Part shown: positions 29,201 to 47,437 of the stretch, piece after piece
Layout of the letters: every line of letters starts with the position of its first letter
Position numbering within the stretch: position 1 is the stretch's first letter
IMG/VR virus record: IMGVR_UViG_3300030673_000004
Coordinates: 124,001-188,000 of that record
Strand: one strand, 5' to 3'
DNA length: 64,000 bases
Notes under the pieces: model-generated
Database searches by the model: none
Told to the model about the DNA's origin: nothing
What the model saw: only the letters and a program-made list of their open reading frames with translations
Program-made: the position numbers and the translations under genes

Positions 29201-30076
29201 GCATCTACTAAAATAACAACTCAAAAAGATTTAATTGTTACATATCCTAAAATGCACATTGAGTTGCAGGATGCGCCTGTGGTACCGTATCCTGCTGATT
29301 TCTCTGCTCAGTATAGATTGACACCTAAGCAATTAGCTTCTTTCTTTGGCTCTCCTAGTGGTGAAGAGGTGGATCGTGCTTCTCTGGCACCCCTGCCGTT
29401 CAAAGCATCACATCTACTGATTACTAATCTGAATGCTTACACAGTTAAGCAGCTTGATGAGCTGTACTCTTGCCCGGCACCTAGTGCGGAGGCACAATCA
29501 TTCGGTGATTCTTTGGCAAGGACTATATTTGCTGCTACTAAGTCTGGACCTTGTCCTGCTTCCTTGCTGACATCAAACATAGCACGTGCTTATATGACAT
29601 CTACATCACCGGGTATGGGAACATTCTTGTTTCAGTATATAGAATCTATTTTAATACCTGACGATGATTTTCGTAGATTTAATATGTTTACTGGTGGTAC
29701 GAGTAATCCTGAATTGGGGTCTGTTCTGTTCTCCTCGTTGCTACCTTTCTATTCTATTTATGCTTCTATTACCCATGTGGGTAGGCAACATGTTTCATTT
29801 GTTGATTTATTGGACGCCTTTATAGGTGATCATGCAGTATCTCCAGAAGCTTTCTGCTCTAAGGAATTTGTTGCTCTGTATAAATTCTGTGTTCATGTTG
29901 GTATTGTTAATAAGATTAGCTCTGATTCTTTACCTGATGCATTATTTGAGGTATATACGGGCCTTAAATTGCATACGCATGTTGCTTTGATTGATGCTTT
30001 GATACATGAGCATAAGAAATCCCATAAAGTAACATCACTATTTCCTATGTATGGGTACCCTTATTATGGCGACTGA
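26228..30076 (+). CDS. Amidoligase-domain protein, paralog 4 (1282 aa)
   Basis: CGFEAEF, YGASH, WSVETDSTI, IELVSPI, TGCHLTFS, KYRSIN and LEFRLPGG. Confidence 0.85.
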   Translation: MDIVTAAQFDRDLSKNLSSLPVRCGFEAEFASALPHDRIPTILEAFLQNPGKTDIEGIPERLGPRPGIEVNNSYGASHGGSYKSWSVETDSTIHVDNHHSYRIELVSPILTLPDMIHGLKAVMAMLRSNVELPSEYVDQDVVSLGETDKETGCHLTFSIKDIDLSKVDVLKLAVLLGEDHWGDVFGRHNNGWAEEALDHFKNWVTTKEIKDPRDLAAAVSDLCNRSALDVQDSELFKWLDNRMEKYRSINMSKTRQGVLEFRLPGGKDYQYKDDKLAIVAERFAYAFYASADPTAYADYYKQKLVRIALKFMATPEAQQRSATQIYDESKVFMRVRSTGGSSYLCLMPDDKPLSAPAMAFALKSLGEGAYSIEQDVPEQQSFRSITGTINLVKTNSILGYVSYALINTKFKLSDTVVSSLLRSFLLPRSVPDTRSVQHYIYLPHTSVDELSVSKFATTTIDVNWPESIKEAVQKEKDASSEWLAPGGSLYLSRIVAAIRNSKASDIIKLHAQYNDQLNTLIYGDFRGVHLDQLAGDPLAKNKFDLMHTVEAPAADIANYLNSSDYQREVQTAWGERFNGNRPIPFIILSSLSQLDESFVARLKTHYWLFAECFPGTVKSYADAIDPDEVSFYLDVLRLLPEEKKESLIVPVSAYIGRQLAGTLNADALSDDIFVKELNVLLEHVSDIADTGAKDTTEVELPTVLSTVSTRIILNMQGMAAQAISPVLGIIFPKLPNFVKYMETMHAHALVDSLTDDMLLNYDGTDFSNKLPPLTIKIFLSNTAKQLESAGAYTGTDVSEIATAFVLAYAKGIIDTIPKQLDSTVVSQAAVHCVLNMKNAAMEGNDELYVKLNVFVDQGTRILDIAPKLKSELYRAYLHDMSKEKETEDSLKEKGALTLAALIAIGYGTYGAQALGAGSATCFNAAVKHYRGAWTSSVTDDFLHHMNALCNLSRPLPACSLFDAISKLISTYPTTGDPAADSLRGIFSDYQVASTKITTQKDLIVTYPKMHIELQDAPVVPYPADFSAQYRLTPKQLASFFGSPSGEEVDRASLAPLPFKASHLLITNLNAYTVKQLDELYSCPAPSAEAQSFGDSLARTIFAATKSGPCPASLLTSNIARAYMTSTSPGMGTFLFQYIESILIPDDDFRRFNMFTGGTSNPELGSVLFSSLLPFYSIYASITHVGRQHVSFVDLLDAFIGDHAVSPEAFCSKEFVALYKFCVHVGIVNKISSDSLPDALFEVYTGLKLHTHVALIDALIHEHKKSHKVTSLFPMYGYPYYGD

Positions 30077-33000
30077 TTATACTGTTGTAACGGCATCTCA
30101 GTTCGATAGAGATCTTCATAGTATTAGTTCTGACTGGTCTAAGTATAAGGGTCCTGCTGTTCGCTGCGGCTTTGAAGCTGAAATGGCTTCTGCTTTATGG
30201 TGGTCTGATTTTGCAGATAAGTTACAATTGGCTCTAGGCATCAATAGGAGTAGCATAGTTGTAAGTGAGCGTTACGGCGCATCTCATGATGGGGATTACC
30301 GCTATTGGTCGGTAGAGTCAGACACATCAATTCAGGTTGATCCGGAGCACCAGTGTCAGATTGAAGTAGTCTCCCCGATACTTGGAATAGATGCTATGCT
30401 GGGGTCTTTGGAGAAGGTCTGCTCGTTGATGGCAACTAAGCAGAGTGGTAAGGCTCTAGCTATTTCAAATAACTCTACTGGATTGCATATAACATTCAGT
30501 CTAGAGGATACTAACCTAACTAAGGTCAATGTTGCTAAGCTGTACCTGTTGCTGGGTGAGGATTACTGGAGATTGGTTTTTGGGCGTAATGATACAAGCT
30601 ATGCAAAATCTGTAAAGCCTGCTTTGCTCGCTATGGTAGCTGAATTGTCTCGTTCTTCTGGCATGAAGAGCATGCAACAGTTTGATCTTGATAAGTTCTA
30701 TCAAGAGATGCGCAGTGATGACATTGGTCGCTATGGTACTATTAATATTTCCAATATAGTTAGCCAGAAAGACTTCCCCGATAAGCAGCGTATCGAGTTT
30801 AGGTTGCCTGGTGGTGCTGGTTATGAGCACAAGTTTTCATTATTAGCACGTGTAGCTCGTAGGTTTGCTTATGCTTTGTACGCATCAACCTGTGATGCTT
30901 ATGATGATGTTTTTGCACTTAAATTGTACAAGTTCCTAGATAAGTATAAAGAAGCTACTCATGAGGATGACCATCGTGTTAAAGCTATAGCAAATACCCA
31001 TGGATTCTCTTTAGTAGATTTTCCTGCAAATATGGATCAGAGTCGTGTTCGGTTATTTAGTTTCATTTATACTGGAAGTAGCCTTACGCACATAGAGGCG
31101 GATAATCCTGCTGCTGGATTCTCATCTGAGATAGAGAGTCAGATAGAGGCGTTGGCTGAGAAGTATGGTGGTCGAAGCATTTCTCTCGGGAGTCACGAGT
31201 TCAGCTTAAAGCCGGAAGTCTTGCTAACGCTGGACCATGGATCTTCGCAGAGATTGGCTTACGGTAAGTATACTGAAACATTGTTACATCTATTTGGGTT
31301 AACTACGAGCGTGCAGCTTTCTCAGTTTACTATGCAGGCTCTTGCAGAAAATTCAAATTGTACAGATATACTGTTTTCCATTATTTCTACTATGGCTGTA
31401 GGACCTCGGGGTGCTGCTGGTTGTTCATATGCTAACTTAGGTTTCTTCTTATCTCAACATGGTGGTGATTCAGATCCTTATGTAATCTATAATAAAGATT
31501 ACTTTCTTGATCATCCTGTTTATTTAGATTACTTCCTTGCTGGTTTTGGTGTAGAACCTAAAGACGGTATCTCTGATTCTTATTTGAGTGCTCTTCGTGG
31601 TATCTTGCAGTATGGTATGATACCGTCTGGTATTACCTCTAGTTTTGTTGGTAAGATAGCTGAAGCCGCTTTTGTGGCGAGTGACTCAGTAGATGCTAAG
31701 ATGCTGCTAAGTTCTTTAGCTACGAAGGGTTATTTAGTAAATGCGTCACAGGCTAGCCATGCTTTTGTACAAGAAGTACTGTCTGATACAGCTAAAGTTG
31801 ATGCATTATTCATGAGAAGAGATGTGGCAGAAATGAACCTTGGTTTTATTTATGGTGTAATAAATAAACTGGGTTTTGCTTCTGAGGTGCGTCCTGCTTT
31901 AATTCAGATAATCAAAGATCACGGCGGTTGGCGTGCATCCGAGACGTTTCCTCGTAATGCCTTAACGTTAGATTTATCTAACGCAGAACTGAACGAGATA
32001 GGTATAACAAATATACCTGGTATTAATCTGCATCCTGATATGCACACGATAAATGAGATACTCGTTGGACTTAAGAATCAGAACTATCCTAGAGACAGCA
32101 TTTCTGCTTTTTTTAATGGTCCCGACGTATTGAGTTATATTAAAACAGAAGATTTTATTGATGATGATGATTTCTGCATAAAATTAGTATCTGGTTGGCT
32201 TGCTAATTATGAAAACGTTCACGGTTCCCTTGTTGAGAATGAGATACTGCATAATGCGGGTATCGCATTTTGGTTTACATCCGCGCTGCATGAATTTGAC
32301 AAACACTTGTTATCTGTTCTTAGCTGGGGTGACGTAGATACTATTTATACCACAGTATTACATAGTAGTTATGCTAACGAGTTATTCCATAAGATTTTAT
32401 CTAGTAGTGCTGCGTCTAAAGAGTTGCCAGCATTTATGCGTGCCTACTTAACTTATGTGAGTTCTGCCAGTAGTGGTGGTATCACTAATGGTGCAATGGA
32501 TGCTCCTCCAAGTATCTATGTACCTTTGTTGAATGAGGCAGGTGTTAAAATACTAACTGCGTTTTTTGAGAAAGGCTTTATTTTTGAGCCTACGTTTAAG
32601 GCGTTGGCAATGACAGTAGACGCCTTTGTAGCATCTTCCTACATAACCGAGATAGCGCCACACTGTTTATTGCTGGATAAAGTGTTCTCAACCTATAAGA
32701 GTAAGTCTGTTGACCCTACTAATGAGAATGGCTTTTTGACTAATCGCATTGAGTCTCTTAGACGTGCGGGTTTTGATGTGCGTGATGTGGCACCAATAGC
32801 TACTAAAGAGTTACAGCATGAGACAGCACCCTATGTTCATGAGTTCTCTGCACCCTTTCAACCATCTCGTGGTGAGCGTAGATCTGTAGAAGATACAATT
32901 TCTTATATTGCAAACCCTCCGTTTCATAAATCTGACTTCTTTGGTGCTGTTGAAGCTATGCCTGCTGAAGATATGCCTGATCTTTTTGTGAAGATACAGT

Positions 33001-33593
33001 CGGGAGCACCCGTTGTTAAAGCTATGGGTTTTGGTCTGTTGACATCTGCGTCTATATACCCGATGGATGATCAGGGGAATCGCTTGATTAAACCTGAGGT
33101 ACTATTAGAGGGTCTTAAATACCCAGATTTTACTACCAACTTAGTGCTTGCTCTGGTGTCAGACGCTAAAGCAGAGACACACAGTTCTAGTACGACACAT
33201 AGAGTGTACGGTTATACTTGGAGTGATTTTTTCTATTTGCTGTTATCTCCTGATACTAAGCTAGGTCCTGTGACCTTTGATACTAAAGATTACTTAGTGA
33301 TGCTTGGTTATTTTGCAGCTTTTGTTAATCCATCTATCCTGTTATCTGAGAGATCTTTGGGATTTTATAAAACATTAGTAAATGAGATACCAGGAAGGTA
33401 TGCTGATCCTAGGACAGAGTCTTCTATTAAGCTTCTGTTGCATAAATTTGCCCGAGGTCTTGTTGAGTTTGATCCTGTTAATCACGTGCGTGTTTTAGAT
33501 CCCAATATGCCTTATCCGTTGCTTCGCTATGTGGCTAAGAATCTGTCAACAACCGCATACCTGCATAATTTCTTTGAAAACTTTTGTAAGTAG
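30066..33593 (+). CDS. Amidoligase-domain protein, paralog 5 (~1175 aa)
   Basis: CGFEAEM, YGASH, WSVESDTSI, IEVVSPI, TGLHITFS, RYGTIN and IEFRLPGG. ATG at 30051 or 30066. Confidence 0.85.
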   Translation: MATDYTVVTASQFDRDLHSISSDWSKYKGPAVRCGFEAEMASALWWSDFADKLQLALGINRSSIVVSERYGASHDGDYRYWSVESDTSIQVDPEHQCQIEVVSPILGIDAMLGSLEKVCSLMATKQSGKALAISNNSTGLHITFSLEDTNLTKVNVAKLYLLLGEDYWRLVFGRNDTSYAKSVKPALLAMVAELSRSSGMKSMQQFDLDKFYQEMRSDDIGRYGTINISNIVSQKDFPDKQRIEFRLPGGAGYEHKFSLLARVARRFAYALYASTCDAYDDVFALKLYKFLDKYKEATHEDDHRVKAIANTHGFSLVDFPANMDQSRVRLFSFIYTGSSLTHIEADNPAAGFSSEIESQIEALAEKYGGRSISLGSHEFSLKPEVLLTLDHGSSQRLAYGKYTETLLHLFGLTTSVQLSQFTMQALAENSNCTDILFSIISTMAVGPRGAAGCSYANLGFFLSQHGGDSDPYVIYNKDYFLDHPVYLDYFLAGFGVEPKDGISDSYLSALRGILQYGMIPSGITSSFVGKIAEAAFVASDSVDAKMLLSSLATKGYLVNASQASHAFVQEVLSDTAKVDALFMRRDVAEMNLGFIYGVINKLGFASEVRPALIQIIKDHGGWRASETFPRNALTLDLSNAELNEIGITNIPGINLHPDMHTINEILVGLKNQNYPRDSISAFFNGPDVLSYIKTEDFIDDDDFCIKLVSGWLANYENVHGSLVENEILHNAGIAFWFTSALHEFDKHLLSVLSWGDVDTIYTTVLHSSYANELFHKILSSSAASKELPAFMRAYLTYVSSASSGGITNGAMDAPPSIYVPLLNEAGVKILTAFFEKGFIFEPTFKALAMTVDAFVASSYITEIAPHCLLLDKVFSTYKSKSVDPTNENGFLTNRIESLRRAGFDVRDVAPIATKELQHETAPYVHEFSAPFQPSRGERRSVEDTISYIANPPFHKSDFFGAVEAMPAEDMPDLFVKIQSGAPVVKAMGFGLLTSASIYPMDDQGNRLIKPEVLLEGLKYPDFTTNLVLALVSDAKAETHSSSTTHRVYGYTWSDFFYLLLSPDTKLGPVTFDTKDYLVMLGYFAAFVNPSILLSERSLGFYKTLVNEIPGRYADPRTESSIKLLLHKFARGLVEFDPVNHVRVLDPNMPYPLLRYVAKNLSTTAYLHNFFENFCK

Positions 33594-33610: not shown

Positions 33611-35410
33611 ATGAATACAAAGCCTGTTAAACTAGGTCATACACGTATGGGGTTTGAAGCTGAGTGTTTCTTAGATACGCGCAAATTGCAGTCTGTTCAT
33701 TTGGATGTAGGTACAGCCTTATCTAAATTCGTAGGACATCATAGTCGTATCAATGATCAGCTCGGTGAGGGTAAACTTCAACATCCTAATTACTCTTACT
33801 GGAATTTAACAGATGACAGTACCATACAAATACCCAATACGTCTGCCCAGGGCGTTGAGGTTGTATCTCCTATATTATCGTACCCGCAGTTCAGTTCTTC
33901 TGTTGAACATGTTTTTGATTTTATAGATGCCTTTGGTGGAACTAATGAAAGCTGCGGTTTTCATATTGGTGTTAGCTTGGATGGTGTAGATCTGTCTGAG
34001 ACTCTTGATGTCTTAAAACTGGTTGTGTTTATTGGCGAAGCTCATATAGCTCAGATGTTTGCTCGCTTTGACAATGACTATGCTCAGCGTCTAGAGCCTT
34101 TTGTATCTGATTATTTGAGTTCTTTTCATGACGTTACAGATCAGATAAAAGAGCTAGTAAAAAGACCTTTGTATCCTGTATCTAGCAGTACGGAGCATGT
34201 TATTCCGTGGGATAAGTATTTTAGCTTTAATTTTACAAAGATAAAATCTAAAAACTATATTGAATTTAGATTAATTGGTGGTGCTGACTACCATAAAAAA
34301 GCTAAGGATGTTTTGGTAGTTGCTCGGAGACTGGCTTGGGCGGTATCTGTTGCATGCGATCCAGAAGCCCTGAAAAGTGACTATGTGAATAAGCTACTGA
34401 GGATAGCTAGTTTGAGTCCTATTAGCTCTGTGTCTACCCATGTTCGTTTGAAGTTGGATGGAAATCAATGCCATATTGACGTTCCTCCCCCTTCCGATGC
34501 TTATGCAAGAACAGCGCTGCGTGATCATTTAACGCTCTCAGCCACTAAGTCTAATGCCGGCAGCTATGCGATCACGGCATGCTCTACAGATGATTTATCC
34601 GGTATTTACCGCGACTCTTTGTATGCGTTGCTAACGACAGGTGTGGGTGGTAACTTTAAGTTTACTATCTCGCCTAAAGCTGATCGTAATGTCTTTTGGA
34701 TAGTATTCTCGCTGTTGGATTTAGTTTCTTCTAATAAGGCTTTGTTGTATCTGCTTACAGCATGTCCCTCTGTATTTTATGTACTGGCTTCCGATGTTAC
34801 ATCTAAGGCTGTGGGTCGTGTTTTAGCATTATCGCATGATGCTTCAACTGCAATAGCTCTGCGCAGAGCGTTAGCGAAATGTAATCTAGCTGATGTAATA
34901 TCTGTGTATACTGCCCTGCATATGGTACCAACGCATATGGATCCTTCTGAGTTCTTAGGTGCCCTAGTAGACACTGGTGTTGATATTTTAGATTTGCCCG
35001 ACTACGCTAAGTATGTTCCTACTGTTTTTGACTCTGCACTAGAGTCGTTCTCTTATTTGGATCTTGTTGCACATAAATATCGTGATCTTGGTGTTATTCT
35101 GCAGATTCTAACATCACTGAATCCTGTGTTGCTTATGAACTCAGATCTGTTTCCTGTGGATAGCTCAAGTTCTTTAGCTCGTATGCTTTTAGAGCAGTGC
35201 CCCTCTGACTTTGACCCGTCCTATGCTGTTTCGTATCTACCTACTCTAGTCAGTATTCTCCAGCAGTATACAACAGAAGATCTTCCTATCTTCTTTCATT
35301 TGTTCGATATAGGCGTTGCTTTTGAGCGTCCTTATATTTTTGGATTGATCACAGCGCTAAAAAGCTACAATGTGGATAAGTCGTGGACAAAATGTTTACA
35401 GTTGCCTTGA
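33611..35410 (+). CDS. Amidoligase-domain protein, paralog 6 (599 aa)
   Basis: MGFEAEC, WNLTDDSTI, VEVVSPI, CGFHIGVS, KYFSFN and IEFRLIGG. Confidence 0.85.
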   Translation: MNTKPVKLGHTRMGFEAECFLDTRKLQSVHLDVGTALSKFVGHHSRINDQLGEGKLQHPNYSYWNLTDDSTIQIPNTSAQGVEVVSPILSYPQFSSSVEHVFDFIDAFGGTNESCGFHIGVSLDGVDLSETLDVLKLVVFIGEAHIAQMFARFDNDYAQRLEPFVSDYLSSFHDVTDQIKELVKRPLYPVSSSTEHVIPWDKYFSFNFTKIKSKNYIEFRLIGGADYHKKAKDVLVVARRLAWAVSVACDPEALKSDYVNKLLRIASLSPISSVSTHVRLKLDGNQCHIDVPPPSDAYARTALRDHLTLSATKSNAGSYAITACSTDDLSGIYRDSLYALLTTGVGGNFKFTISPKADRNVFWIVFSLLDLVSSNKALLYLLTACPSVFYVLASDVTSKAVGRVLALSHDASTAIALRRALAKCNLADVISVYTALHMVPTHMDPSEFLGALVDTGVDILDLPDYAKYVPTVFDSALESFSYLDLVAHKYRDLGVILQILTSLNPVLLMNSDLFPVDSSSSLARMLLEQCPSDFDPSYAVSYLPTLVSILQQYTTEDLPIFFHLFDIGVAFERPYIFGLITALKSYNVDKSWTKCLQLP

Positions 35411-36637: not shown

Positions 36638-37795
36638 ATGCCAAAGCCTAAGTCCAAGCGTCCTGATTTCGCACAGCCCCAGGGTGATCCTGATTCACAG
36701 TTGCTCGCAGAAGCTCTTCCAGGAATACCCGGAACTGAAGGAATGCGCCGACTGACTCCCGAGGAAGAGGCTACAGCTCTTCCTTTGCCTGTAAAGGAAC
36801 CTGCTGTGAAGAGGACAATTCCAAAGTGGCTTCCTCGTGAGTTAGATCTGACTGCTCTTCCTGAGGGAATGGAGGAGTATGTACACCCCGACCTCAAGTC
36901 CGCTATTGAGGAATCTCCGTTACAGACTGAAGGACTGGATGAGGTTCTTCGCGAAATTGAGAAGGAACAAGCCGTTGATTCACCTGTTCGTAGGCATTCT
37001 TCTTTTGCACAAGTACAGCCACCGGAAGTAACTGATGCTCCTGTGATTCCGCAGCAACTTCCTACCACACCAGTACCTCCTGTGCAACAATATCGACCTG
37101 CTGAGCCACCACGTCCTCCAGTTATGGCTTCTGGTGCTCGTCCCCCTGTAGCTACACGCCAAGCAGTTCCTACTAAGCCTCAGATTAAGCGACACCCTGT
37201 GTTTGATTCGCTTCTTCGGGATTTTGGTCTATCACAGGAATTGAAGTTTGAAGTCTATAAGGGGCATAAGTTTACCTTTCGACAGTACAATGCGGAACAA
37301 AATACTTTCTGTATTTCTTTGGCTGATACCCTGTCCACATCAGCGCTTGAGTATAACGAGAGGATACGCCAAAATTTAGTAGCTGTGTCTCTTGTTGCTG
37401 TTGATGACCAACCGATCTATGAGATCCTAGATTATAATCCACGAGATGCTGGGTTTGTTATGACGGATCCGTTTAATCTTCCAAGTAAGCTATCTATGCT
37501 GCTGGTTGAACATGTGCGTAAGTTGTTCTTAGAGCAGTTTGCTCCTGGCGTGATTATTGATTTGTGGTCTATTTATGACTCACTGTTTCCTGCTTCAGCC
37601 ATTAAAGATACAGCAGCTTCTCCTGATGAAGTTTGGCGGTTCAAGTGTCCTGTCACTGGATGCACTTATTCTGTAGATGCTGTGCCTGAATTTGATGGCC
37701 AGGGTTTGCCTAGAAAGCACTTCTGCCCAGAGCACGGTAACGAGTTGTCTATCATGGGGCAGGTAGCAGAGCTGGAGAATGTCCCTTTGGCATAA
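36638..37795 (+). CDS. Tail assembly chaperone (lambda gpG analogue)
   Basis: Upstream of the tape measure gene; ends 6 nt after a slippery heptamer. Pro-rich N-terminus and C-terminal CPVTGC...CPEH. Confidence 0.7.
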   Translation: MPKPKSKRPDFAQPQGDPDSQLLAEALPGIPGTEGMRRLTPEEEATALPLPVKEPAVKRTIPKWLPRELDLTALPEGMEEYVHPDLKSAIEESPLQTEGLDEVLREIEKEQAVDSPVRRHSSFAQVQPPEVTDAPVIPQQLPTTPVPPVQQYRPAEPPRPPVMASGARPPVATRQAVPTKPQIKRHPVFDSLLRDFGLSQELKFEVYKGHKFTFRQYNAEQNTFCISLADTLSTSALEYNERIRQNLVAVSLVAVDDQPIYEILDYNPRDAGFVMTDPFNLPSKLSMLLVEHVRKLFLEQFAPGVIIDLWSIYDSLFPASAIKDTAASPDEVWRFKCPVTGCTYSVDAVPEFDGQGLPRKHFCPEHGNELSIMGQVAELENVPLA

Positions 37796-37853
37796 AGCTC
37801 ACGGAGGGCGTACCTGCTCTAGCTCTCCGTGGGCATGTAGGGGCTGCCTACAA
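37783..37853 (+). other. Programmed -1 ribosomal frameshift signal
   Basis: In-frame C-CCT-TTG heptamer (37783-37789), a 13-bp stem GCTCACGGAGGGC/GCTCTCCGTGGGC starting 8 nt downstream, and a second TGTAGG/CCTACA hairpin. The -1 frame is open to 38304. Confidence 0.8.
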
Positions 37854-38304
37854 CCTCTTGCCCAATGATTCTACACTGCTCTTAGCTACAGAAGAGCAGC
37901 TTTTATTTGCTGATCACTATAAGCGTGTTCAAATGGACATGATGTTTGATCGTTTGGCGAAACTTCTAGGAGTGAAGTATTCGGCTCTTGACCTACAAGA
38001 ACTTGTTCGTGCTCTTGCTAACCCTAAACGGAAGGTACGTAAGGGTAAAGATGGAAAACCAGATCTACCTAAGGATTTATTCGTACCGCTAGCTCTACTT
38101 GTGAACCCGCAATCTATTGAGATTCTAAAGAATGCTGCTAAGGGGATGAAGCTTCGAGCTAGGGGTGATGGTGATCTATCTGGGATGGATAAGGATGCGT
38201 ACCAGGAACTGATGGAGAGATCTCTTCAGAAAACGATTAAAGATGCTGTTGCAGCACTGAATACTGAGGCTGACCATGATAAACCTATTCCTACGAAGAC
38301 ATAA
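37789..38304 (+). CDS. -1 frame segment of the chaperone fusion (lambda gpGT analogue, ~555 aa in total)
   Basis: The frame of track ORF 37858..38304 stays open upstream through the slippery site (GIKLTEGVPALALRGHVGAAYNLLPND...). The TTG start has no SD; the stop overlaps the tape measure ATG. Confidence 0.75.
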   Translation, partial: GIKLTEGVPALALRGHVGAAYNLLPNDSTLLLATEEQLLFADHYKRVQMDMMFDRLAKLLGVKYSALDLQELVRALANPKRKVRKGKDGKPDLPKDLFVPLALLVNPQSIEILKNAAKGMKLRARGDGDLSGMDKDAYQELMERSLQKTIKDAVAALNTEADHDKPIPTKT

Positions 38305-41300
38305 TGCCTGAATCTATGTCTACAGGATCCGTTGTACCTGGAGCTCATGGTCCACATGTTGGTGTTAGTTCCTCCTCACAGCCATCGGGGCCGACAAGTC
38401 CTTTGATCTCGGGCAAGTCGGCCAATGATTACGCTTTCATGACTCGTGAGATGGAACGAGATAGAAAGCTGTATGATGCCGATTGGCAACGTCGCATAAA
38501 AGCTGAGAAGGCTCTATATGCGACAATGATTAAATCGCAGAAAGGCATGAACCAGAACATATCGGGTATCTCTACGGATTCCAAGGCATTCTGGGCTCGT
38601 ACCTCTGCTGAGTTTAATCGGACTATTCGTGGTATGGCGATCTCTATTAAGAGAGAGATGTCTGAAGTATCTAAGAATCTTGAGAGCTCTATGGACAAGA
38701 TGATAAGTCTGTCCATGCAGAGACAAAAGAAGGCTGATGATGCTCTTCGTGCTGCTGTTAAGCAGGGTGATCTGTATACATATCAATTAGCTTCTTACAA
38801 GGCGAAAAATGAGTCAAATCGTCTGAATCATGCAACAACATATAAGCGTAAGAATATAGAGTTGCAAGAAGCTTCGCGTGCTAAGACTGTTTATGAAACA
38901 AAGATGTCTCGTGGTGAAACATTATCACCTGAAGACTATCGTGCGTATGAACGCTTAACTGGTGAAATACGTGATCTTGAGCGTGAGATGAAGAAGCTAA
39001 ACATGGTTAATATGTTTTTAGCTAAAGGTATTACTGATGTAGAGCAGGCTATGCGAGCTGCTGACATAGAACTCGATTATGCTGAGAAGCACTTCAAATC
39101 TATGGAACAGCGTATGAGTGAGTGGAAAGTTAATTCCATGGAGGCTGCTAATCATACACTCACATTTGCTAACGCGCTTCATCATTTGGGTGAAGCTTTC
39201 CGTGTCCTGTACAAAGATTACGCATTATTCACAGATCAAGCTTACAAGATGAACGGTGTGATGGATTTGAATAATCTGTCATTTGCTACATTGGCAAAGA
39301 ATACAGTTTCTCTTGAGGTATCTAATGCTAAGCTTAGGTTATTTGCTGCCACTGCCGGTATATCCACTGAAGAGTTTGATCAATTGAATGGTAAGCTGTT
39401 TAATACTTATACTATGATGGATAAGTTTGGTAAGCTAGATAATCGCAAATATGAAATGATGGGTAGGGAACTACTTAGTTATAGTCGCCAAACGGGTGCC
39501 TCCTTAGATGAGACTATTGGGATACATGCTAAGCTGCGCATGCAATTTGGTAAGACTAATAGTGAAGCTATTCGTTCTATGCATTCTATCATAGCTGCAC
39601 AGAAAGAAACACAGTCCGCTACATCCAATGCTTTTGGTGACTTTGCTACGTTCAATGATGACTTTCAAAAGTCAATTGAATCTGTAATTGATGGTTACAG
39701 CGGTTTTAAGCTTGATATTTCTGGTGTGACATCGTTGTTCAAAGATCAGGTTCAAGTAGCTGCTAAATTGGGATATACGTATCAACAAAGTTTTGATATA
39801 GCTAAGAAGTTTACAGGTCTTCTGACTAAAAAGAATAGTAGCTATATGTCATATCATACAGGGCAGATAGTACTGTCTCAAGCAGAGGAGTTATTTGGTG
39901 GTGAGCAGGGGCTGAAATCTTTGCAGGATATGAAGCCTGATGAACGTGGAAAATATATTGAAAAAGTTCTGGGAACCGGGAAGGGTAAGGCGTCGGGATT
40001 TAAGACTAGCGATATTCAAGACTTATCTAATGCTGTAACAAATACTATGTACGGCCCGGCTGCCATTCAAGCTGCTGATATGCTTGAAGGGTCTACTCCT
40101 ATGATTGCTGCTAAACTTCAACAACTGGATACCATGCAGCAGCAGGGTCTGGGGTCTGGTCCTGCATTCAAGGCTATTATGGGTGAGCAGGGTGGCCCAG
40201 ATGCTATGCGTGAGTATCAGATGATGCAGGATATGCTAAAGAATCGTGGATCAAAGTCTTATACCCAGCTTGGTGCTGAGTTAAAAGCTACTAATGATAA
40301 GAATGGTGAGAAACAAGCTCCGGATAAGGCAGCTACCTTTTTGGATCCCACTAATTTGTGGAATCATTTCAAAGATTTTTGGGATAAATCGCCATTAGGC
40401 CAACTTGGTAAGTTTGCTGCCGTTCTTACCGGTGCTGTTGTGCTAAACACTATGGCACTCGGTGTGAATACTATTGCACTATTGGGGAATACTGGTGGTA
40501 AGGCTGCTGGCGTTTTAGGTTCTATTGGTAGAAAAATTCCGGGTATCCGTGGTATTCTAGGACCTGCAAAAATACCTGGAGGTGTTGCTGGTGAGGTAGA
40601 GTCCGGTGTACTGAAAAAGTCTAGTAGCTTAGGTAAAGTCGCTAAGGTTGCGAGTAAGTTTGGAACTCCCGGTAAGCTTCTTGCTGGGGCAGCTCTTGCT
40701 GCTGGTGGTATATGGGGTTTAACTAAGCTCTGGGATCATTATTCGAACAAGTCACCTCAGGATCAGTCAAAAGAGCAGCAGGCGGAGTTAGACGCCCAGA
40801 ATTTACTTGGCAATACCGGTGATCAGGTTGACGAGCAGAAGAAAACAAATGAGAAACTTGACAAGATAAGTGACAATTTGGGTAAGGGCGGTGCGGGTTC
40901 CGGTGGTGGCCTAATGGGCACTGTGGGCACTGTCGCCGCTGGTGCTACTGGGGTTGCTGGTGGTTTAGCTGCCTATTTTGGTATAAAGGGTTTACTCTCT
41001 AGCGGTGCTGATGACGCTGCTATAGCAGCCAAAGCTGCAGAAGCAGCCACGGGTGCTAAAACAGCCGAAGCTGTAGGCGAGGGGGCTAAAGCTGCATCTG
41101 CAGGCGCTAAGACTGTATCCAAGTTGACACCGTTTCTTGAGGCGCTAGGACCAATAGCAACTTATTTAACAACAGAAGGTCCTGATGGCCGCAAGATGGC
41201 TGCTGCTACAGGCGCTGCTCTTGGTGGAACAGCGGGATTGATAGGGGGTGGTGGCTTACTATCTGCTGTCTTGGGTACTGCTGGCATGATAGGTGGTGAG

Positions 41301-41708
41301 CATCTAGGTACAGGGATCTATGATACGTGGCTTGCGGATAAGACACTAATAAAAGGTAATGCTCATATGCCATCATTAGCAAAATCACCTACGGATTTTG
41401 ATGCTAATACTGTTGCTGGTGCTGTAGGGCAGTCTACTGCTGGTACTGGAGCCTCATCAGGTACTATTGGTTCTAATGGCAAGCCTGTATCTACCACAGG
41501 AACTCCTTCTGGTGTAGGTACTGGATCCTTTACTAATGTCGGAAGGGATGGTACTGCTGAATTGACGTTGAAAGTTAAAGTTGCAAATATGCACCACGCT
41601 GTCCGTACTGTTTTACGTGATGACTATAATACTCAACACTCTGATTCTGGGATGGCTCGCACTGCATGGGAGCCCTCAGTAATCGGTGGTGCCGTTCCAG
41701 GAACTTAA
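38304..41708 (+). CDS. Tape measure protein
   Basis: 1134 aa; coiled-coil N-terminal half and Gly/Ala-rich hydrophobic C-terminal segments; follows the G/GT chaperone. Confidence 0.85.
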   Translation: MPESMSTGSVVPGAHGPHVGVSSSSQPSGPTSPLISGKSANDYAFMTREMERDRKLYDADWQRRIKAEKALYATMIKSQKGMNQNISGISTDSKAFWARTSAEFNRTIRGMAISIKREMSEVSKNLESSMDKMISLSMQRQKKADDALRAAVKQGDLYTYQLASYKAKNESNRLNHATTYKRKNIELQEASRAKTVYETKMSRGETLSPEDYRAYERLTGEIRDLEREMKKLNMVNMFLAKGITDVEQAMRAADIELDYAEKHFKSMEQRMSEWKVNSMEAANHTLTFANALHHLGEAFRVLYKDYALFTDQAYKMNGVMDLNNLSFATLAKNTVSLEVSNAKLRLFAATAGISTEEFDQLNGKLFNTYTMMDKFGKLDNRKYEMMGRELLSYSRQTGASLDETIGIHAKLRMQFGKTNSEAIRSMHSIIAAQKETQSATSNAFGDFATFNDDFQKSIESVIDGYSGFKLDISGVTSLFKDQVQVAAKLGYTYQQSFDIAKKFTGLLTKKNSSYMSYHTGQIVLSQAEELFGGEQGLKSLQDMKPDERGKYIEKVLGTGKGKASGFKTSDIQDLSNAVTNTMYGPAAIQAADMLEGSTPMIAAKLQQLDTMQQQGLGSGPAFKAIMGEQGGPDAMREYQMMQDMLKNRGSKSYTQLGAELKATNDKNGEKQAPDKAATFLDPTNLWNHFKDFWDKSPLGQLGKFAAVLTGAVVLNTMALGVNTIALLGNTGGKAAGVLGSIGRKIPGIRGILGPAKIPGGVAGEVESGVLKKSSSLGKVAKVASKFGTPGKLLAGAALAAGGIWGLTKLWDHYSNKSPQDQSKEQQAELDAQNLLGNTGDQVDEQKKTNEKLDKISDNLGKGGAGSGGGLMGTVGTVAAGATGVAGGLAAYFGIKGLLSSGADDAAIAAKAAEAATGAKTAEAVGEGAKAASAGAKTVSKLTPFLEALGPIATYLTTEGPDGRKMAAATGAALGGTAGLIGGGGLLSAVLGTAGMIGGEHLGTGIYDTWLADKTLIKGNAHMPSLAKSPTDFDANTVAGAVGQSTAGTGASSGTIGSNGKPVSTTGTPSGVGTGSFTNVGRDGTAELTLKVKVANMHHAVRTVLRDDYNTQHSDSGMARTAWEPSVIGGAVPGT

Positions 41709-41712
41709 ATAC

Positions 41713-41934
41713 ATGCATATTCTTGAAATATCTGAACAGATTGGCTTTTTAGCTGTTGTTCGTTCTACAACAGGTGAAGTTGTTATATCAACTAATCCAC
41801 CTATTTTCTTATCTAATAATGCTCCTCGTATCTTAGCAGATAATAAAGAGACAGCATCTAAAATCATACATACAAGTAACATTAAATCTCTTGTAGATAA
41901 TAAACTTGTAACGGTACTCACACCAACTTGTTAA
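41713..41934 (+). CDS. Small hypothetical protein
   Basis: ATG 41713 just after the tape measure stop. Confidence 0.5.
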   Translation: MHILEISEQIGFLAVVRSTTGEVVISTNPPIFLSNNAPRILADNKETASKIIHTSNIKSLVDNKLVTVLTPTC

Positions 41935-41945
41935 GGATGCACTAA

Positions 41946-42368
41946 ATGCTTCTATCCCTTTTAGTTTCTTTGTTGATATCAGCAGCACCTGTAGCTTACG
42001 ATTCTGGGTCAACTATTACAATGACCGTACCAACTATATGTATGGATAGGTCTGATTTTCAGTACTCTGTTGTAGGGTTAACGGATAGATCATCCTATGT
42101 TGGTATTGTAGAAGCACAAAATACGCTGATAAAGAGTTATCAGTCACAGATAGCTACATGTAGCTCTATTGTAGCTCAGAAGGACATAGTTATTTCTTCG
42201 GACTCTACTAGGTTGTCGTTAGTACAAGCACAGAAGGATATTGCTCGTGATAGTACTAAGGCGGCTATTAAGCAATCTTTTTGGCAGGGGTTCCGTTGGG
42301 GATCGGGTAGTGTTGTTGCTGCTGAGGCAGTAGCTATTATTGTTATCCTGGTGAAATATGCCTTATAG
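41946..42368 (+). CDS. Signal-peptide/coiled-coil membrane protein (possible spanin-like)
   Basis: Hydrophobic N-terminus, central coiled coil and C-terminal hydrophobic segment; AAGGA SD. Function inferred. Confidence 0.45.
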   Translation: MLLSLLVSLLISAAPVAYDSGSTITMTVPTICMDRSDFQYSVVGLTDRSSYVGIVEAQNTLIKSYQSQIATCSSIVAQKDIVISSDSTRLSLVQAQKDIARDSTKAAIKQSFWQGFRWGSGSVVAAEAVAIIVILVKYAL

Positions 42369-45279
42369 TCTTGAAACCTGTTACGTACCTGGTGACTCAT
42401 CTGCACAGTTTGCTGCTTTAGCTGATTCATTAGATGCGGCATCCACTGAAGCTCAAACAGCTATAGATAAGGTTCTTGCTGATCCTAAGTTAACTGCTGT
42501 TTTAGCTTCGTTTCAAGATGGTGTGACATCACATAATAGTGTGCTCACGTCTCCTGACGTATCTACTGTTGATGATCTATTAAACGATATTGGTGCCCTT
42601 GGTTTTACTGCCACAGATCGGGACTATCAAAAAGTAACAGAAGCTAAAGGTTTTATGTTTGTTGATAGTAATTTATACCTTGTTAATCAGTATGATGCTA
42701 ACTCAGTAACACAACATGCACCGTCATCCACATACTCTATTGCTGGATTAGGTAAAGGGGTTACAGATATTGATTTAGATTATTTAGGTGTTAAATCATC
42801 CTCGGATTATAATAAGAGTCTAGTACAAAAGTCTGGTTCCTATAATCAGACAGCTTATAAGGCAAATACAAAAACATCTTCATCTACAACAGGAACTGAG
42901 TATCAGACTGATGGTAATGTTTCTATTATGCGTGAGGCTTTGCGTGCTGCTGGTGGTGATATTGATAGTATGCGGTTAATTTTTGCTGCTGGTAAGAGTA
43001 AAGGTTATGCTGTAGTTTGGTCTGTTGTCTCTCAAGAGGAGGTCAGTGTTGATGATGCGGATACCGGTGATTATGATAAAATTCGTGAAAGACATGACTA
43101 TCCTTTATATGATGACCAAATAACATTTTATGCTTCTAAAAAAATAGCTATTGTTTCTCAGGAAACTTTTGTAGGTATAAACATATCAAAAGATTCTGCT
43201 GTTACTGCTGTTAAGGCTACCTATAAGAGTAAGCACGGTGTAGAGTTAGCATACGACCCATCGTTGTTTTGTCGCGTATTCAAATTTTGCTTAAATAATG
43301 TTATTAGCTCAGCTCCTTTATTTATTACCGCAGGTCTAGATGTATCTAAATTAAGTTCTACCAGTTATTCTTTAGGCATCTCTATATCTGGGTATGCTAT
43401 TGTAGTTGATGTAACAGGTGATCGGGGTACAGGCACAATTGGTACATATACAGCCCAGTCTGTAGCATCTTGTATTACAGCGCAGCTTGGGGATATATTA
43501 AGTGTACGTGTTTTTGGCAATGAAATTGTTTTTACAGCAAAAGTAAAAGGCTCATCTGCGTTTATTCAGTTTTTTGATACAACATACAGTGCCTCATCTG
43601 TTTTAGGGATAGACGGGTCTATCTATCAATTACAAACTATAGCTAAAACTAAATCTTCGGCCTCGTCTTTAAGAACTCTTAAGTCTCTTGTTGTTGGTGG
43701 TGGGGCATCTAATCTGGCAGATACTGCACTATCTGGGACACTTTACTCAGATTGCAGCCGTTATGGTTTTACAGATGAACAAAAGAAAGCGTTGATTAAT
43801 GGTGCATATTATTGGACTTCTTTGAATTCATACTCATCACGTTCTAAGGTTGCATTTACTGCAGTAGCTTCAGATCTAGCTGCTGTTACAACTACGATAA
43901 ATAAAACTAAATATATAAATGATACAAAAGATGCTATTGCTTTATTAGGGCAGGATACATTTTTTATGGAAATGCCTGAGATAGATGTCAGACTCTTAGA
44001 TTTGTTTATAGCGGAATTTGAGACTACTGGAGTTGTTTCTTTATTAGCTGAGCGGATTAATGTATATGATTTATCATTTAACATACCTGTATCTGTTGGT
44101 TTTTCTTACTTAGGTCAAGTAGTTGAGAAATCATCTTCATCTGGCGGCGTTAGTACAGTACAAACACAAGTTAGCTATATTACGGCCTTTCATGAGAATA
44201 TATCACCTGTTTGGAAACTCTATAATGAGATTGATTGGTTGGAGTCGCGTGCATCTGATCTTGATACAGATGATTTTATTTCAGAATTGGCTACAGATCT
44301 TGGATTAGCTGCAGGTGTTACGTATACAACATCATCTACTACCTCTGTTGGTGATTCCTCATCAAGTTCTACAAATGTTGGTGATTTTGACTTAGCCTTA
44401 CGCATGCAAGATCCTAATTGGGGAAATAGCATTCTAGATGCTATTGCTGCCGCTAGTGTAATTACAATACCACAGGCTTGGCTTAATAAACAGGAAGCTA
44501 AGGTAGATAAATATCTTACGGGTATTGAGAATGATATTACAGACTGGATGGATGACAAGATGTCATCTCTTCTCGGCACTTTAGGTCTTGACGATGACAT
44601 AGCTGAAGCTCTTCGTAATTATAAACGATTACTGAATGGGCTCAAGACTATTACTCGTGTGCTGAAAACAGCTACTGCTTTTGTACAGCGTCAGCAGCAA
44701 GTATATAAGAACATACTTAAAATACTAAACGCCGGTATTAATTTCACATCAAATATGTATGCTAATTTTGAGATCAATACAAAATATGTTAGTTGCTATG
44801 CGTCTGGTAGCGGTAGTGTTGCATTGTCCGCTGCTTTTCAGAAATTAGTTAACGTTTTGAATAAAATTCTTGAATATATTAACAATATGCTTATGAAATT
44901 AGCGAAAATCGTGGATAAGTTCTTTACAGCACTTAACTGTACTATACAGACACTGTTCTCGTTTTTCTCTGCAACACTCTCATACTCTACGACAGCAGCA
45001 GGTGCCTACTCTGTACTTGGGGTGTCTCTTACGGTCAGTACTCAATTACACTGTACTATTAGCCTAGGTTATACGCCAGATACAACATTGATAACTTTGC
45101 TTGGTCAGGTGCAAAATCAGATCAATGCTTTGATAGGATCGTTACACTTAAGCACGATTACCATACATACGCATGCTGACACGACAGACTCACTTAAGGC
45201 CAAGGTCGCGGGCATAGGTGTAGGGGACTTGATTTCTCAGTTTGAGCAGAAGTTGGCTGCTCTTAAGAACTGTATTTAG
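42358..45279 (+). CDS. Large putative tail/baseplate-associated protein
   Basis: 973 aa, Ser/Thr-rich, with an internal beta module and a helical C-terminus; located after the tape measure gene. Confidence 0.5.
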   Translation: MPYSLETCYVPGDSSAQFAALADSLDAASTEAQTAIDKVLADPKLTAVLASFQDGVTSHNSVLTSPDVSTVDDLLNDIGALGFTATDRDYQKVTEAKGFMFVDSNLYLVNQYDANSVTQHAPSSTYSIAGLGKGVTDIDLDYLGVKSSSDYNKSLVQKSGSYNQTAYKANTKTSSSTTGTEYQTDGNVSIMREALRAAGGDIDSMRLIFAAGKSKGYAVVWSVVSQEEVSVDDADTGDYDKIRERHDYPLYDDQITFYASKKIAIVSQETFVGINISKDSAVTAVKATYKSKHGVELAYDPSLFCRVFKFCLNNVISSAPLFITAGLDVSKLSSTSYSLGISISGYAIVVDVTGDRGTGTIGTYTAQSVASCITAQLGDILSVRVFGNEIVFTAKVKGSSAFIQFFDTTYSASSVLGIDGSIYQLQTIAKTKSSASSLRTLKSLVVGGGASNLADTALSGTLYSDCSRYGFTDEQKKALINGAYYWTSLNSYSSRSKVAFTAVASDLAAVTTTINKTKYINDTKDAIALLGQDTFFMEMPEIDVRLLDLFIAEFETTGVVSLLAERINVYDLSFNIPVSVGFSYLGQVVEKSSSSGGVSTVQTQVSYITAFHENISPVWKLYNEIDWLESRASDLDTDDFISELATDLGLAAGVTYTTSSTTSVGDSSSSSTNVGDFDLALRMQDPNWGNSILDAIAAASVITIPQAWLNKQEAKVDKYLTGIENDITDWMDDKMSSLLGTLGLDDDIAEALRNYKRLLNGLKTITRVLKTATAFVQRQQQVYKNILKILNAGINFTSNMYANFEINTKYVSCYASGSGSVALSAAFQKLVNVLNKILEYINNMLMKLAKIVDKFFTALNCTIQTLFSFFSATLSYSTTAAGAYSVLGVSLTVSTQLHCTISLGYTPDTTLITLLGQVQNQINALIGSLHLSTITIHTHADTTDSLKAKVAGIGVGDLISQFEQKLAALKNCI

Positions 45280-47403: not shown

Positions 47404-47437
47404 GGTTTATACTTCTTGGGGTGATCAGGAGATACTG

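What the first reader, a model, noticed from the sequence alone, without database searches (positions are those of the whole stretch)
37783..37853. Programmed -1 frameshift joining the tail chaperone to the next ORF
Seen: an in-frame X-XXY-YYZ heptamer, C-CCT-TTG, lies two codons before the stop of 36638..37795. A 13-bp GC-rich stem (37797-37833) and a second hairpin follow. The -1 frame is open from there to the stop overlapping the tape measure ATG. Established: a G/GT frameshift upstream of the tape measure gene is widespread in long-tailed phages. Here it predicts 385-aa and ~555-aa products, much larger than lambda gpG/gpGT, with a less usual CCCTTTG site and a two-hairpin stimulator.
Basis: partly seen in the sequence, partly recalled or inferred. 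Interest (0 to 1): 0.6.

Follow-up and report, generated by a model that had tools for sequence, protein, structure and literature searches.

The report
Conserved -1 frameshift in jumbo phages
Near the end of a 385-residue gene in a 375-kb uncultivated phage, a slippery sequence plus an RNA hairpin almost certainly makes some ribosomes slip back one base and produce a longer 555-residue fusion protein; the same signal is kept across a large, unnamed family of metagenomic phage proteins, but whether these are tail-assembly chaperones is only inferred.

Summary
C CCT TTG (37783-37789) is in frame in ORF A (36638-37795). Seven nt downstream lies a 13-bp stem (37797-37834). The -1 frame runs to a stop overlapping the next ATG (38304). 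This gives 385-aa and 555-aa products.

Comparison makes a programmed -1 frameshift very likely. All 14 related loci (A identity about 20-100%) have the heptamer, once as C CCT TTA. In each, the 0-frame stop follows one codon later. The -1 frame stays open for 154-226 codons.

The trans-frame peptide is homologous from its first residues (PFG[I/L]...), upstream of every possible start codon. In two loci the -1 frame opens one codon before the heptamer. In one locus no downstream gene was called.

Synonymous sites are frozen across the heptamer, spacer and stem. Stems start 6-8 nt after the heptamer in most loci, with different sequences in distant ones.

A profile of A finds 149 cluster representatives; 122 end in Pro-Leu-x-stop.

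The "tail chaperone" and "tape measure" labels remain inference. They rest on synteny with a long, Gly/Ala-rich downstream protein and a weak language-model resemblance. No family, fold or complex search supports them.

The parts
36638..37795 (+). ORF A, the zero-frame product of 385 aa. It has an N-terminal region conserved in the close clade (about residues 1-120), a Pro-rich linker, and a C-terminal domain (about 186-385) that defines a family of 149 cluster representatives.
   Evidence: the start has the Shine-Dalgarno-like AAGGTG
37646..37735 (+). Cys/His motif of A (C337, C342, C363, H366), a zinc-ribbon-like element. C363 is invariant, C337 and C342 are nearly invariant, and H366 (invariant in the close clade) is the majority residue, across 57 family members.
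   Evidence: only weak fold matches to zinc ribbons or rubredoxin-like knuckles (Z below 3)
37783..37789 (+). Slippery heptamer C CCT TTG (X XXY YYZ) in the zero frame of A.
   Evidence: identical in 13 of 14 related loci and C CCT TTA in the 14th; P383 and L384 invariant in 57 sequences
37790..37796 (+). A 7-nt spacer (GCATAAA) that contains the last sense codon GCA and the zero-frame stop TAA (37793-37795).
   Evidence: invariant in the 9 close loci
37797..37834 (+). Stimulatory stem-loop: a 13-bp stem (37797-37809 paired with 37822-37834) and a 12-nt loop.
   Evidence: ten pairs are invariant and the codons across both arms are synonymously frozen; distant relatives have stems at the same distance with other sequences
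37836..37852 (+). Second small hairpin (6 bp). It is present here but not conserved, and is probably not part of the signal.
   Evidence: 85% of cells paired; two of its pairs are each unpaired in 3-4 of the 9 sequences
37789..38304 (+). Trans-frame (-1) coding part: 171 codons plus the stop. It is reached only by slipped ribosomes and is predicted all-helical. The annotated 148-aa ORF B (37858 TTG..38304) is its 3' portion.
38304..41708 (+). ORF C, 1134 aa. Its ATG overlaps the stop of the -1 frame (TAATG). It has a charged N-terminal third and a Gly/Ala-rich region with hydrophobic segments (701-729, 971-997). It is tape-measure-like but matches no family.
41713..45279 (+). Three syntenic genes conserved downstream in the relatives: 73 aa (41713-41934), 140 aa (41946-42368) and 973 aa (42358-45279). 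Functions unknown.

Best explanation
This is a programmed -1 ribosomal frameshift cassette. Most ribosomes translating ORF A read CCU (Pro383), UUG (Leu384) and GCA (Ala385), then stop at UAA, giving the 385-aa protein A. A 13-bp stem-loop starts 7 nt after the heptamer. It sits at the mRNA entrance while CCU and UUG occupy the P and A sites and resists unwinding. In a fraction of ribosomes both tRNAs then slip back one base onto CCC and UUU. Decoding continues in the -1 frame (Gly-Ile-Lys-Leu-Thr-Glu...) for 171 codons, giving a 555-aa fusion A-B with the junction ...ENVPL|GIKLTE. B is not an independent gene. What is shown: the anatomy of the signal and its evolutionary conservation. What is inferred: the slippage itself, its efficiency, and the function. 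The functional guess is that A and A-B act like the lambda G/GT pair, an abundant short form plus a rare long form that helps assemble the long, tape-measure-like protein C encoded next. I hold the frameshift at about 0.9 and the chaperone/tape-measure reading at about 0.5. The confidence figure below refers to the frameshift.
For: (1) All 14 loci with A identity from about 20% to 100% keep the heptamer (13 as C CCT TTG, 1 as C CCT TTA), exactly one sense codon before the 0-frame stop (TAA, TAG or TGA). The -1 frame runs 154-226 codons to or near the start of the big downstream gene. (2) In the close clade the gap between A's stop and the start that gene callers gave B is 23, 23, 59, 62, 62, 86, 143, 146 or 149 nt. 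Every value equals 2 mod 3, and the called starts are non-homologous TTG, GTG or ATG codons. (3) The -1 peptide is homologous from its first residue (PF[G/S][I/L][K/E]L...) in 10 loci at 24-79% identity. (4) In L008 and L009 the -1 frame opens one codon before CCC with no start codon. In L033 no B gene was called at all. (5) Downstream of the stem, 14 of 20 variable columns fall on -1-frame codon position 3. (6) Of 104 invariant degenerate residues in A, only 5 use one codon in all 9 sequences, and three of these are P383, L384 and A385. In the -1 frame, residues 1-8 and 15-17, which are the two stem arms, are also single-codon. (7) A stem begins 6-8 nt after the heptamer in the 9 close loci and in L030 and L032. 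L030 has an 18-bp stem and L032 a long-range stem closing a three-way junction, so the sequences differ. L034 has a hand-drawn 7-of-8-pair stem with compensated changes. (8) The profile search found 149 cluster representatives. Of these, 122 end Pro-Leu-x-stop and 7 end Pro-Leu-stop, against about 0.7% expected. In 91 of the 122, x is a residue with a G-starting codon, which keeps Gly in the -1 frame. (9) This is the only site of its kind in the 375-kb genome. (10) For the functional analogy, the order A, B, C (784-1375 aa), about 73 aa, about 140 aa, about 920-975 aa is conserved, and C resembles tape-measure clusters in a language-model search (score 0.94, a lead only).
Against: There is no direct evidence of the fusion protein. 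The phage is uncultivated, no proteome exists, and the RNA runs found hold only a 225-249-nt piece of A as assembled contigs. The lower 10 pairs of the stem never vary in the close clade, so classical covariation is thin there: one compensated pair, and only 4 of 500 shuffles reach the observed score. Part of the 5'-arm conservation is also explained by the conserved peptide (K/E)-L-(T/A). Two or three distant loci (L031, L033 and, by RNAfold, L034) have only weak structures at the expected place. Z = G with a Leu tRNA in the A site is not among the best-studied efficient bacterial slippery sites (my own knowledge). Against the chaperone reading: A, B, C and their neighbours hit no Pfam, PHROG, NCBIfam, PDB or fold library. 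No sheath, tube or tape-measure family is detectable anywhere in the genome. The genes upstream are amidoligase-domain giants, not a tube protein.
Confidence: 0.88

Rival explanations
1. B is a separate gene translated from its own start (TTG at 37858 or another near-cognate codon), or by termination-reinitiation after A's stop. The heptamer and the hairpin would then be incidental.
For: Gene callers annotated B as a separate ORF in 12 of 13 relatives. Some called starts have a moderate Shine-Dalgarno-like match, for example -5.6 kcal/mol in the window.
Against: The called starts are at non-homologous positions and use different codons. L004 and L012 have no ATG, GTG or TTG at the window's TTG position. 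The most conserved part of the -1 peptide lies upstream of all of them and begins at the heptamer. The third-position substitution pattern in the -1 frame starts right after the stem. In L008 and L009 the -1 frame is closed one codon before the heptamer with no start codon in between. L033 has no callable start.
Confidence: 0.04
2. The frameshift is real, but the module is not a tail chaperone/tape-measure set. A and A-B could be short and long forms of some other assembly, scaffolding or ejection protein, and C an ejected or membrane-inserting internal virion protein. This would fit the neighbouring cluster of giant amidoligase-domain proteins.
For: No tail-chaperone or tape-measure family matches any member. 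A is 385 aa with a zinc-ribbon-like motif, unlike known chaperones. The upstream neighbours are four large amidoligase-domain proteins rather than tube or sheath proteins. No sheath or tube is recognisable in this genome or in the 278-kb relative, whereas they are found in PaBG, Motura and SNUABM_7. C has hydrophobic Gly/Ala-rich segments that would also suit a membrane-active ejection protein.
Against: The layout matches the signature used to recognise G/GT-tape-measure sets in other phages (established knowledge; PMC5009743). That layout is two ORFs joined by a -1 shift at the very end of the first, directly followed by the longest helical, Gly-rich gene of the module. The feature search placed C next to tape-measure clusters. 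C varies from 784 to 1375 aa among relatives, as tape measures do.
Confidence: 0.4
3. The A/B arrangement is a frameshift mutation, an assembly error, or the product of transcriptional slippage rather than ribosomal slippage.
For: Single metagenomic assemblies do contain indel errors. Recoding by RNA polymerase slippage exists in bacteria and phages (PMC5009743).
Against: The same frame arrangement appears in 14 loci from independent samples and assemblers. 129 of 149 family representatives end in PL(x)-stop. DNA contigs from other runs show no indel at the site. The runs are only C3 and T3, far shorter than the homopolymers that support polymerase slippage (my own knowledge).
Confidence: 0.02

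Closest known systems
Lambda G/GT tail assembly chaperone frameshift, and its counterparts in most long-tailed phages (Levin 1993; Xu 2004, 2013, 2014, as summarised in PMC5009743)
   Same: A -1 slip on an X XXY YYZ heptamer within the last codons of the first ORF. The result is a short abundant product and a rare C-terminally extended one. The pair sits directly upstream of the longest helical gene of the module. The feature is conserved despite very low protein similarity.
   Different: A is 385 aa (109-451 aa across the family) with a Pro-rich linker and a Cys/His zinc-ribbon-like motif, against about 140 aa for gpG. There is no sequence or fold match to any Phage_TAC family. No major tail or tube gene is recognisable upstream. 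One heptamer (C CCU UUG/A) and the stop spacing are kept in all 14 loci with DNA, and the protein C-termini suggest the same family-wide. As I recall, slippery sites differ widely among G/GT sets. A strong stem-loop is present here, whereas lambda G/GT needs no strong downstream structure as far as I recall.
P2 E/E+E' and Mu-like myovirus chaperone frameshifts
   Same: A -1 frameshift upstream of the tape measure gene in phages with complex tails.
   Different: Those lie between tube and tape-measure genes, and the proteins belong to recognised families. Here neither context nor family membership could be shown.
T4-like tail assembly chaperones (Vladimirov, Gautam and Davidson 2022, cited in PMC10885494)
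   Same: Large phages in which the chaperone pair escaped sequence-based detection for a long time.
   Different: T4-like phages are reported to encode the short and long forms as separate genes without frameshifting. This family uses a strictly conserved frameshift.
E. coli dnaX gamma/tau frameshift and IS3/IS911 transposase frameshifts
   Same: A bacterial-type -1 cassette: heptamer, spacer of about 6-7 nt, and a stable stem-loop as stimulator.
   Different: Those use A AAA AAG with tRNA-Lys, and often an upstream Shine-Dalgarno-like enhancer. Here the site is C CCU UUG (Pro/Leu tRNAs). I did not specifically search for a conserved Shine-Dalgarno-like enhancer upstream of the heptamer.
C CCU UUU (NS1' of the Japanese encephalitis serogroup flaviviruses) and C CCU UUA (Giardia lamblia virus) slippery sites (my own recollection)
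   Same: The same CCC-UUU core of the heptamer, followed by an RNA structure.
   Different: These are eukaryotic ribosomes and RNA viruses, with a different Z base and unrelated proteins.

Membership tests
Canonical -1 programmed ribosomal frameshift cassette | In-frame X XXY YYZ heptamer | tested here: met
   C CCT TTG at 37783-37789, with CCT and TTG as zero-frame codons. It is conserved in 14 of 14 loci, with Z = A in one.
Canonical -1 programmed ribosomal frameshift cassette | Stable RNA structure beginning about 5-9 nt after the heptamer | tested here: met
   A 13-bp stem starts 7 nt downstream (8th nt after the heptamer), z = -2.8. In the 9 close loci and in L030 and L032 a stem starts at the 6th-8th nt after the heptamer. 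The structure is weak in L031 and L033 and alternative in L034. Covariation in the close clade is thin, but the arms have different sequences in distant loci.
Canonical -1 programmed ribosomal frameshift cassette | Long -1 ORF overlapping the site, under purifying selection, without a start of its own | tested here: met
Canonical -1 programmed ribosomal frameshift cassette | Suppressed synonymous variation over the signal | tested here: met
   P383, L384 and A385, together with -1-frame residues 1-8 and 15-17, use a single codon in 9 sequences. About 2% of comparable columns elsewhere in A do so.
Canonical -1 programmed ribosomal frameshift cassette | Trans-frame protein actually made | not testable with these tools
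   There is no isolate and no proteome. The RNA runs hold only a small assembled piece of A.
Phage tail assembly chaperone pair (G/GT type) | Two overlapping ORFs joined by a frameshift at the end of the first | tested here: met
   See above.
Phage tail assembly chaperone pair (G/GT type) | Sequence or fold membership in a known chaperone family (Pfam Phage_TAC families, PHROG tail chaperones, solved chaperone structures) | tested here: not met
   There are no hits for A, for the trans-frame part, or for 57 family members. The AlphaFold models had pLDDT 49 and 53, and the fold searches gave nothing above Z = 3 or below E = 0.01.
Phage tail assembly chaperone pair (G/GT type) | Located directly upstream of the tape measure gene | tested here: inconclusive
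   The downstream 1134-aa protein is tape-measure-like in composition and by language-model features. It matches no tape-measure family.
Phage tail assembly chaperone pair (G/GT type) | Located downstream of the major tail or tube gene | tested here: inconclusive
   The upstream genes are proteins of 107 and 247 aa with no family, preceded by amidoligase-domain giants. No tube or sheath family rings anywhere in the genome.
Phage tail assembly chaperone pair (G/GT type) | The short form binds the tape measure protein | tested here: inconclusive
   Complex prediction with A(186-385) and C(1-800) gave no verdict. This is evidence neither for nor against binding.
Tape measure protein (for ORF C) | Match to a tape-measure family (PF10145, PF20155, PHROG or NCBIfam tape measures) | tested here: not met
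   tblastn against 50,697 phage records found nothing.

The most novel reading that the evidence does not exclude
The A/A-B/C module may not be a disguised lambda-type chaperone set. It may be a distinct frameshift-controlled assembly or ejection module of a deep, uncultivated jumbo-phage lineage. In that reading a zinc-ribbon protein family has kept one heptamer (C CCU UUG), one stop spacing and a stem-loop over its whole radiation. In 10 of 13 loci the stop of the -1 frame also overlaps the start of C (TAATG). Translation of C could therefore be partly coupled to the frameshift event itself, which would set a fixed A-B:C ratio.
Probability: 0.2. Interest if true: 0.7.

Novelty: new variant of a known kind. 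Interest (0 to 1): 0.55.

Why it matters
The result corrects the annotation of a whole family. The small ORF called after these genes is not a gene but the C-terminal extension of a frameshift product, and in some contigs it is missed altogether. It also gives a compact, testable -1 signal (heptamer, 7-nt spacer, 13-bp stem) with a Pro/Leu tRNA pair that has been little studied in bacteria. In the 14 loci with DNA, the heptamer and the stop spacing are kept down to about 20% protein identity. If the G/GT analogy holds, this cassette would be the first handle on the tail-assembly genes of a jumbo-phage lineage in which no sheath, tube or tape-measure gene can be recognised by homology. If the analogy fails, it marks a new use of the short-form/long-form strategy.

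Tried and rejected
These searches found nothing.
- blastn and tblastn of the region, of A, of C and of two distant family members against 50,697 phage records.
- IMG/VR scans with A, B and the exact 24-nt motif.
- The metagenome scan returned only the source contig.
- Profiles of A and of the trans-frame part against five jumbo-phage records, PaBG, SNUABM_7, NCTB, Motura and fHe-Yen9-02.
- The word search with the C alignment found only close relatives, all without names.
- Rfam found no family.

Structure and binding.
- AlphaFold2 on 9-row alignments gave low-confidence models (pLDDT 53.5 and 49.1). The fold searches are therefore uninformative.
- The Atlas search on A gave nothing named.
- Complex prediction with A(186-385) and C(1-800) gave no verdict. 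I do not count it for or against binding.

Only assembled contigs were available. There was no RNA coverage of the junction and no indels at the site.

Rejected ideas.
- A second candidate frameshift, GGGTTTT at genome position 115,985, is an ORF nested in a longer gene.
- Shine-Dalgarno strength does not discriminate, because usage in this phage is mixed.

Two steps were left out.
- The joined 555-aa fusion has no reference and was neither built nor sent to any tool. A and the trans-frame part were analysed separately by reference.
- No alternative genetic code was used.

Full report
**Setting.** The window is bases 124,001-188,000 of a 375.5-kb virus record with direct terminal repeats, so it is a complete jumbo-phage genome. 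The source is a peat metagenome. The window carries several recognisable genes:
- a major head protein (381-1496);
- a ribonucleotide reductase (9833-12238);
- a large terminase (54963-57107);
- six large proteins with an N-terminal Amidoligase_2 domain.

The terminase is only about 30% identical to those of PaBG, Erwinia SNUABM phages, Motura and similar jumbo phages. The region of the finding has no DNA or protein match in 50,697 phage records.

**The observation.** ORF A runs from 36638 to 37795 and encodes 385 aa.
- Its last codons are GTC CCT TTG GCA TAA, so C CCT TTG (37783-37789) is an in-frame X XXY YYZ heptamer.
- The -1 frame is open from 37741 to the stop at 38302-38304. That stop shares a base with the ATG of the 1134-aa ORF C.
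- Seven nucleotides after the heptamer a 13-bp stem forms, 37797-37809 paired with 37822-37834. A 6-bp hairpin follows at 37836-37852. The fold energy is -33.4 kcal/mol with z = -2.8.
- Tandem slippage would give A(1-384) followed by 171 codons of the -1 frame, which is 555 aa.
- In the whole genome only 7 in-frame heptamers have a -1 frame running at least 60 codons past the stop. This site has by far the strongest downstream fold of the 7. The one other candidate I inspected is a nested spurious ORF.

**Close relatives.** A word-based protein search found relatives of A at 46-86% identity. A search with the -1 ORF found two more lineages. I fetched their contigs.
- In all nine distinct loci B lies in the -1 frame of A.
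- The gap between A's stop and the start that gene callers assigned to B is 23, 23, 59, 62, 62, 86, 143, 146 or 149 nt. Every value is 2 mod 3.
- The assigned starts are TTG, GTG or ATG codons at non-homologous places.
- A 24-nt string covering the heptamer, the spacer with the stop, and the 5' arm of the stem is identical in all nine. So is the 3' arm.
- The -1 peptide PFGIKLTE... is conserved upstream of every assigned start.
- In L008 and L009 the -1 frame is closed by a stop two codons before CCC, with no start codon in between. The conserved peptide there can only be reached from the zero frame, and the shift is confined to a 16-nt window that contains the heptamer.

**Selection signatures.**
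- After the stem, 14 of 20 variable alignment columns fall on codon position 3 of the -1 frame, 5 on position 1 and 1 on position 2. The so-called intergenic gap is therefore coding in the -1 frame.
- Among 104 invariant residues of A with degenerate codons, only 5 use the same codon in all nine sequences. Three of these are P383, L384 and A385.
- In the -1 frame, residues 1-8 and 15-17, which are the two arms of the stem, are also single-codon. Most other invariant residues use 2-5 codons.
- This points to a nucleotide-level constraint on top of the coding constraint, exactly over the heptamer, spacer and stem.
- Classical covariation is thin because 10 of 13 pairs never vary. One pair alternates A-U and G-U. 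The top pair shows C-G, A-U and U-G.
- The second hairpin is only 85% paired and has pairs unpaired in 3-4 of the 9 sequences. I take it to be incidental.

**The wider family.** A full HMM search with the A profile returned 149 representatives of 50%-identity clusters (E up to 1e-3; 63 at or below 1e-10). They match the C-terminal domain right up to the last residue.
- In an alignment of 57 of them (17-54% identity to A), the only invariant columns are C363, P383 and L384.
- Of the 149, 122 end in Pro-Leu-x-stop and 7 in Pro-Leu-stop, against about 0.7% expected from composition.
- In 91 of the 122, x is Ala, Gly, Val, Glu or Asp. These are the residues whose codons start with G, which keeps Gly as the third -1-frame residue.
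- None of the 57 hits any PHROG, and none of the ten clusters checked carries a name other than 'hypothetical protein'.

Four distant members with long contigs, plus one 278-kb IMG/VR contig, were read at the DNA level.
- All have C CCT TTG, except L033 which has C CCT TTA. One sense codon follows, then TAG, TGA or TAA.
- The -1 frame is open for 154-226 codons. The trans-frame peptides align from residue 1.
- In L033 no B gene was called at all.
- The stems start 6-8 nt after the heptamer in the nine close loci and in L030 and L032, with different sequences. L030 has an 18-bp stem (-45 kcal/mol over 95 nt). L032 has a long-range stem closing a three-way junction (-41 kcal/mol). L034 has a stem with compensated changes.
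- L031 and L033 have only weak structures there.

**Mechanism.** These data fit a standard tandem-slippage -1 frameshift.
- tRNA-Pro on CCU and tRNA-Leu on UUG re-pair with CCC and UUU while the stem-loop stalls the ribosome.
- Independent initiation, reinitiation, an assembly error and polymerase slippage are each contradicted by several of the points above.
- The phage itself encodes 34 tRNAs, including Pro(UGG), Leu(UAA), Leu(CAA) and Phe(GAA). Whether these influence slippage is unknown.
- The efficiency of the shift cannot be estimated from sequence.

**Function.** The G/GT analogy rests on layout only.
- Among relatives the order is conserved: A, B, a long protein C (784-1375 aa), then proteins of about 73, about 140 and about 920-975 aa.
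- C has a highly charged N-terminal third. It also has a Gly/Ala-rich region (34% G+A in residues 641-1000) with hydrophobic segments.
- A language-model feature search places C beside tape-measure clusters at score 0.94. The number of shared features is low, so this is a lead only.
- Against the analogy, no family, solved-structure or fold search gives anything for A, the trans-frame part, C or their neighbours.
- The AlphaFold models are of low confidence.
- No sheath, tube or tape-measure family is found anywhere in this genome or in its 278-kb relative, although the same sheath search works on PaBG, Motura and SNUABM_7.
- The complex prediction gave no verdict.
- A itself is unlike known chaperones. 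It has a clade-specific N-terminal region, a proline-rich linker, an alpha/beta domain and a Cys-Cys-Cys-His zinc-ribbon-like motif.

I therefore give the chaperone/tape-measure reading about even odds. The main alternative is another assembly or ejection function.

**Comparison with what is known.**
- Frameshift-linked chaperone pairs upstream of tape-measure genes are widespread in long-tailed phages, and T4-like phages are the reported exception (PMC5009743; PMC10885494).
- This case works like them, and like the dnaX and IS3-type bacterial cassettes in its heptamer-spacer-stem anatomy.
- It differs in the protein family, in the size and zinc-ribbon motif of the first product, and in the missing tube-gene context.
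- It also differs in keeping one heptamer and one stop spacing in all 14 loci with DNA, down to about 20% protein identity. The protein C-termini of 129 of the 149 representatives are consistent with the same site family-wide.
- I found no paper describing C CCU UUG as a phage slippery site. These text searches were noisy.

**Verdict.** A programmed -1 frameshift is very likely, at about 0.9. The two-hairpin stimulator is not supported. The tail-chaperone and tape-measure labels are plausible but unproven. In novelty this is a new variant of a known kind.

- The joined 555-aa sequence has no reference and was not built or submitted anywhere.
- No non-standard genetic code was invoked.

Noticed in passing
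window 4226-6946, 6989-9739, 22405-26214, 26228-30076, 30051-33593, 33611-35410: Six large proteins (599-1282 aa) each carry an N-terminal Amidoligase_2 (PF12224) domain. Four of them lie in tandem directly upstream of the frameshift module, and the relatives keep the same arrangement. They may be virion-borne or ejected enzymes. Function unknown.
   Followed up: partly
genome G000 about 91.5-117.8 kb (outside the window, upstream of it): A tRNA island of 34 tRNA genes includes Pro(UGG), Leu(UAA), Leu(CAA) and Phe(GAA). These are the tRNAs that read the slippery codons and their -1 counterparts.
   Followed up: no
window about 37957-37977 (trans-frame residues 59-65, AKL..VK): A second patch has invariant residues that use a single codon in all nine close relatives. 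This could be another RNA element or chance.
   Followed up: no
window 38302-38306 and the equivalent sites in the relatives: The stop of the -1 frame overlaps the start of the 1134-aa gene, as TAATG or a few overlapping bases, in 10 of 13 loci. The Shine-Dalgarno match before that start varies from strong to none. Translation of C may be partly coupled to the frameshifted ribosomes.
   Followed up: partly
whole genome G000 and the 278-kb relative G001 (L034): No Pfam sheath, tube or tape-measure family is detectable. The PaBG sheath protein also finds nothing, whereas the same sheath model rings in PaBG, Motura and SNUABM_7. The tail type of this lineage is unknown.
   Followed up: partly
genome G000 294075-303013 (L020 4075-13013): Two adjacent collagen-like tail-fibre proteins of 2004 and 974 aa have very strong PHROG tail-fibre matches.
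   Followed up: no
window 37876-37899: A terminator-like hairpin followed by a T-rich run lies inside the trans-frame coding part. I did not check whether it is conserved.
   Followed up: no
window 36898-37146: Two metatranscriptome runs, one from a bioreactor and one from mosquitoes, each hold one contig that covers only this piece of A, which spans the end of its N-terminal region and the Pro-rich linker. The contigs are 225 nt (36908-37132, identical to the window) and 249 nt (36898-37146, two differences). The reason is unknown. This does not show expression.
   Followed up: no
L031 9448-9720: In one distant relative a 90-aa ORF with a T4_Y16D (PF26092) match is inserted between the trans-frame ORF and the long downstream gene.
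   Followed up: no
window 47402-47800 and 58333-59229: The phage encodes a stand-alone response-regulator receiver domain protein and an ADP-ribosylglycohydrolase-like protein.
   Followed up: no
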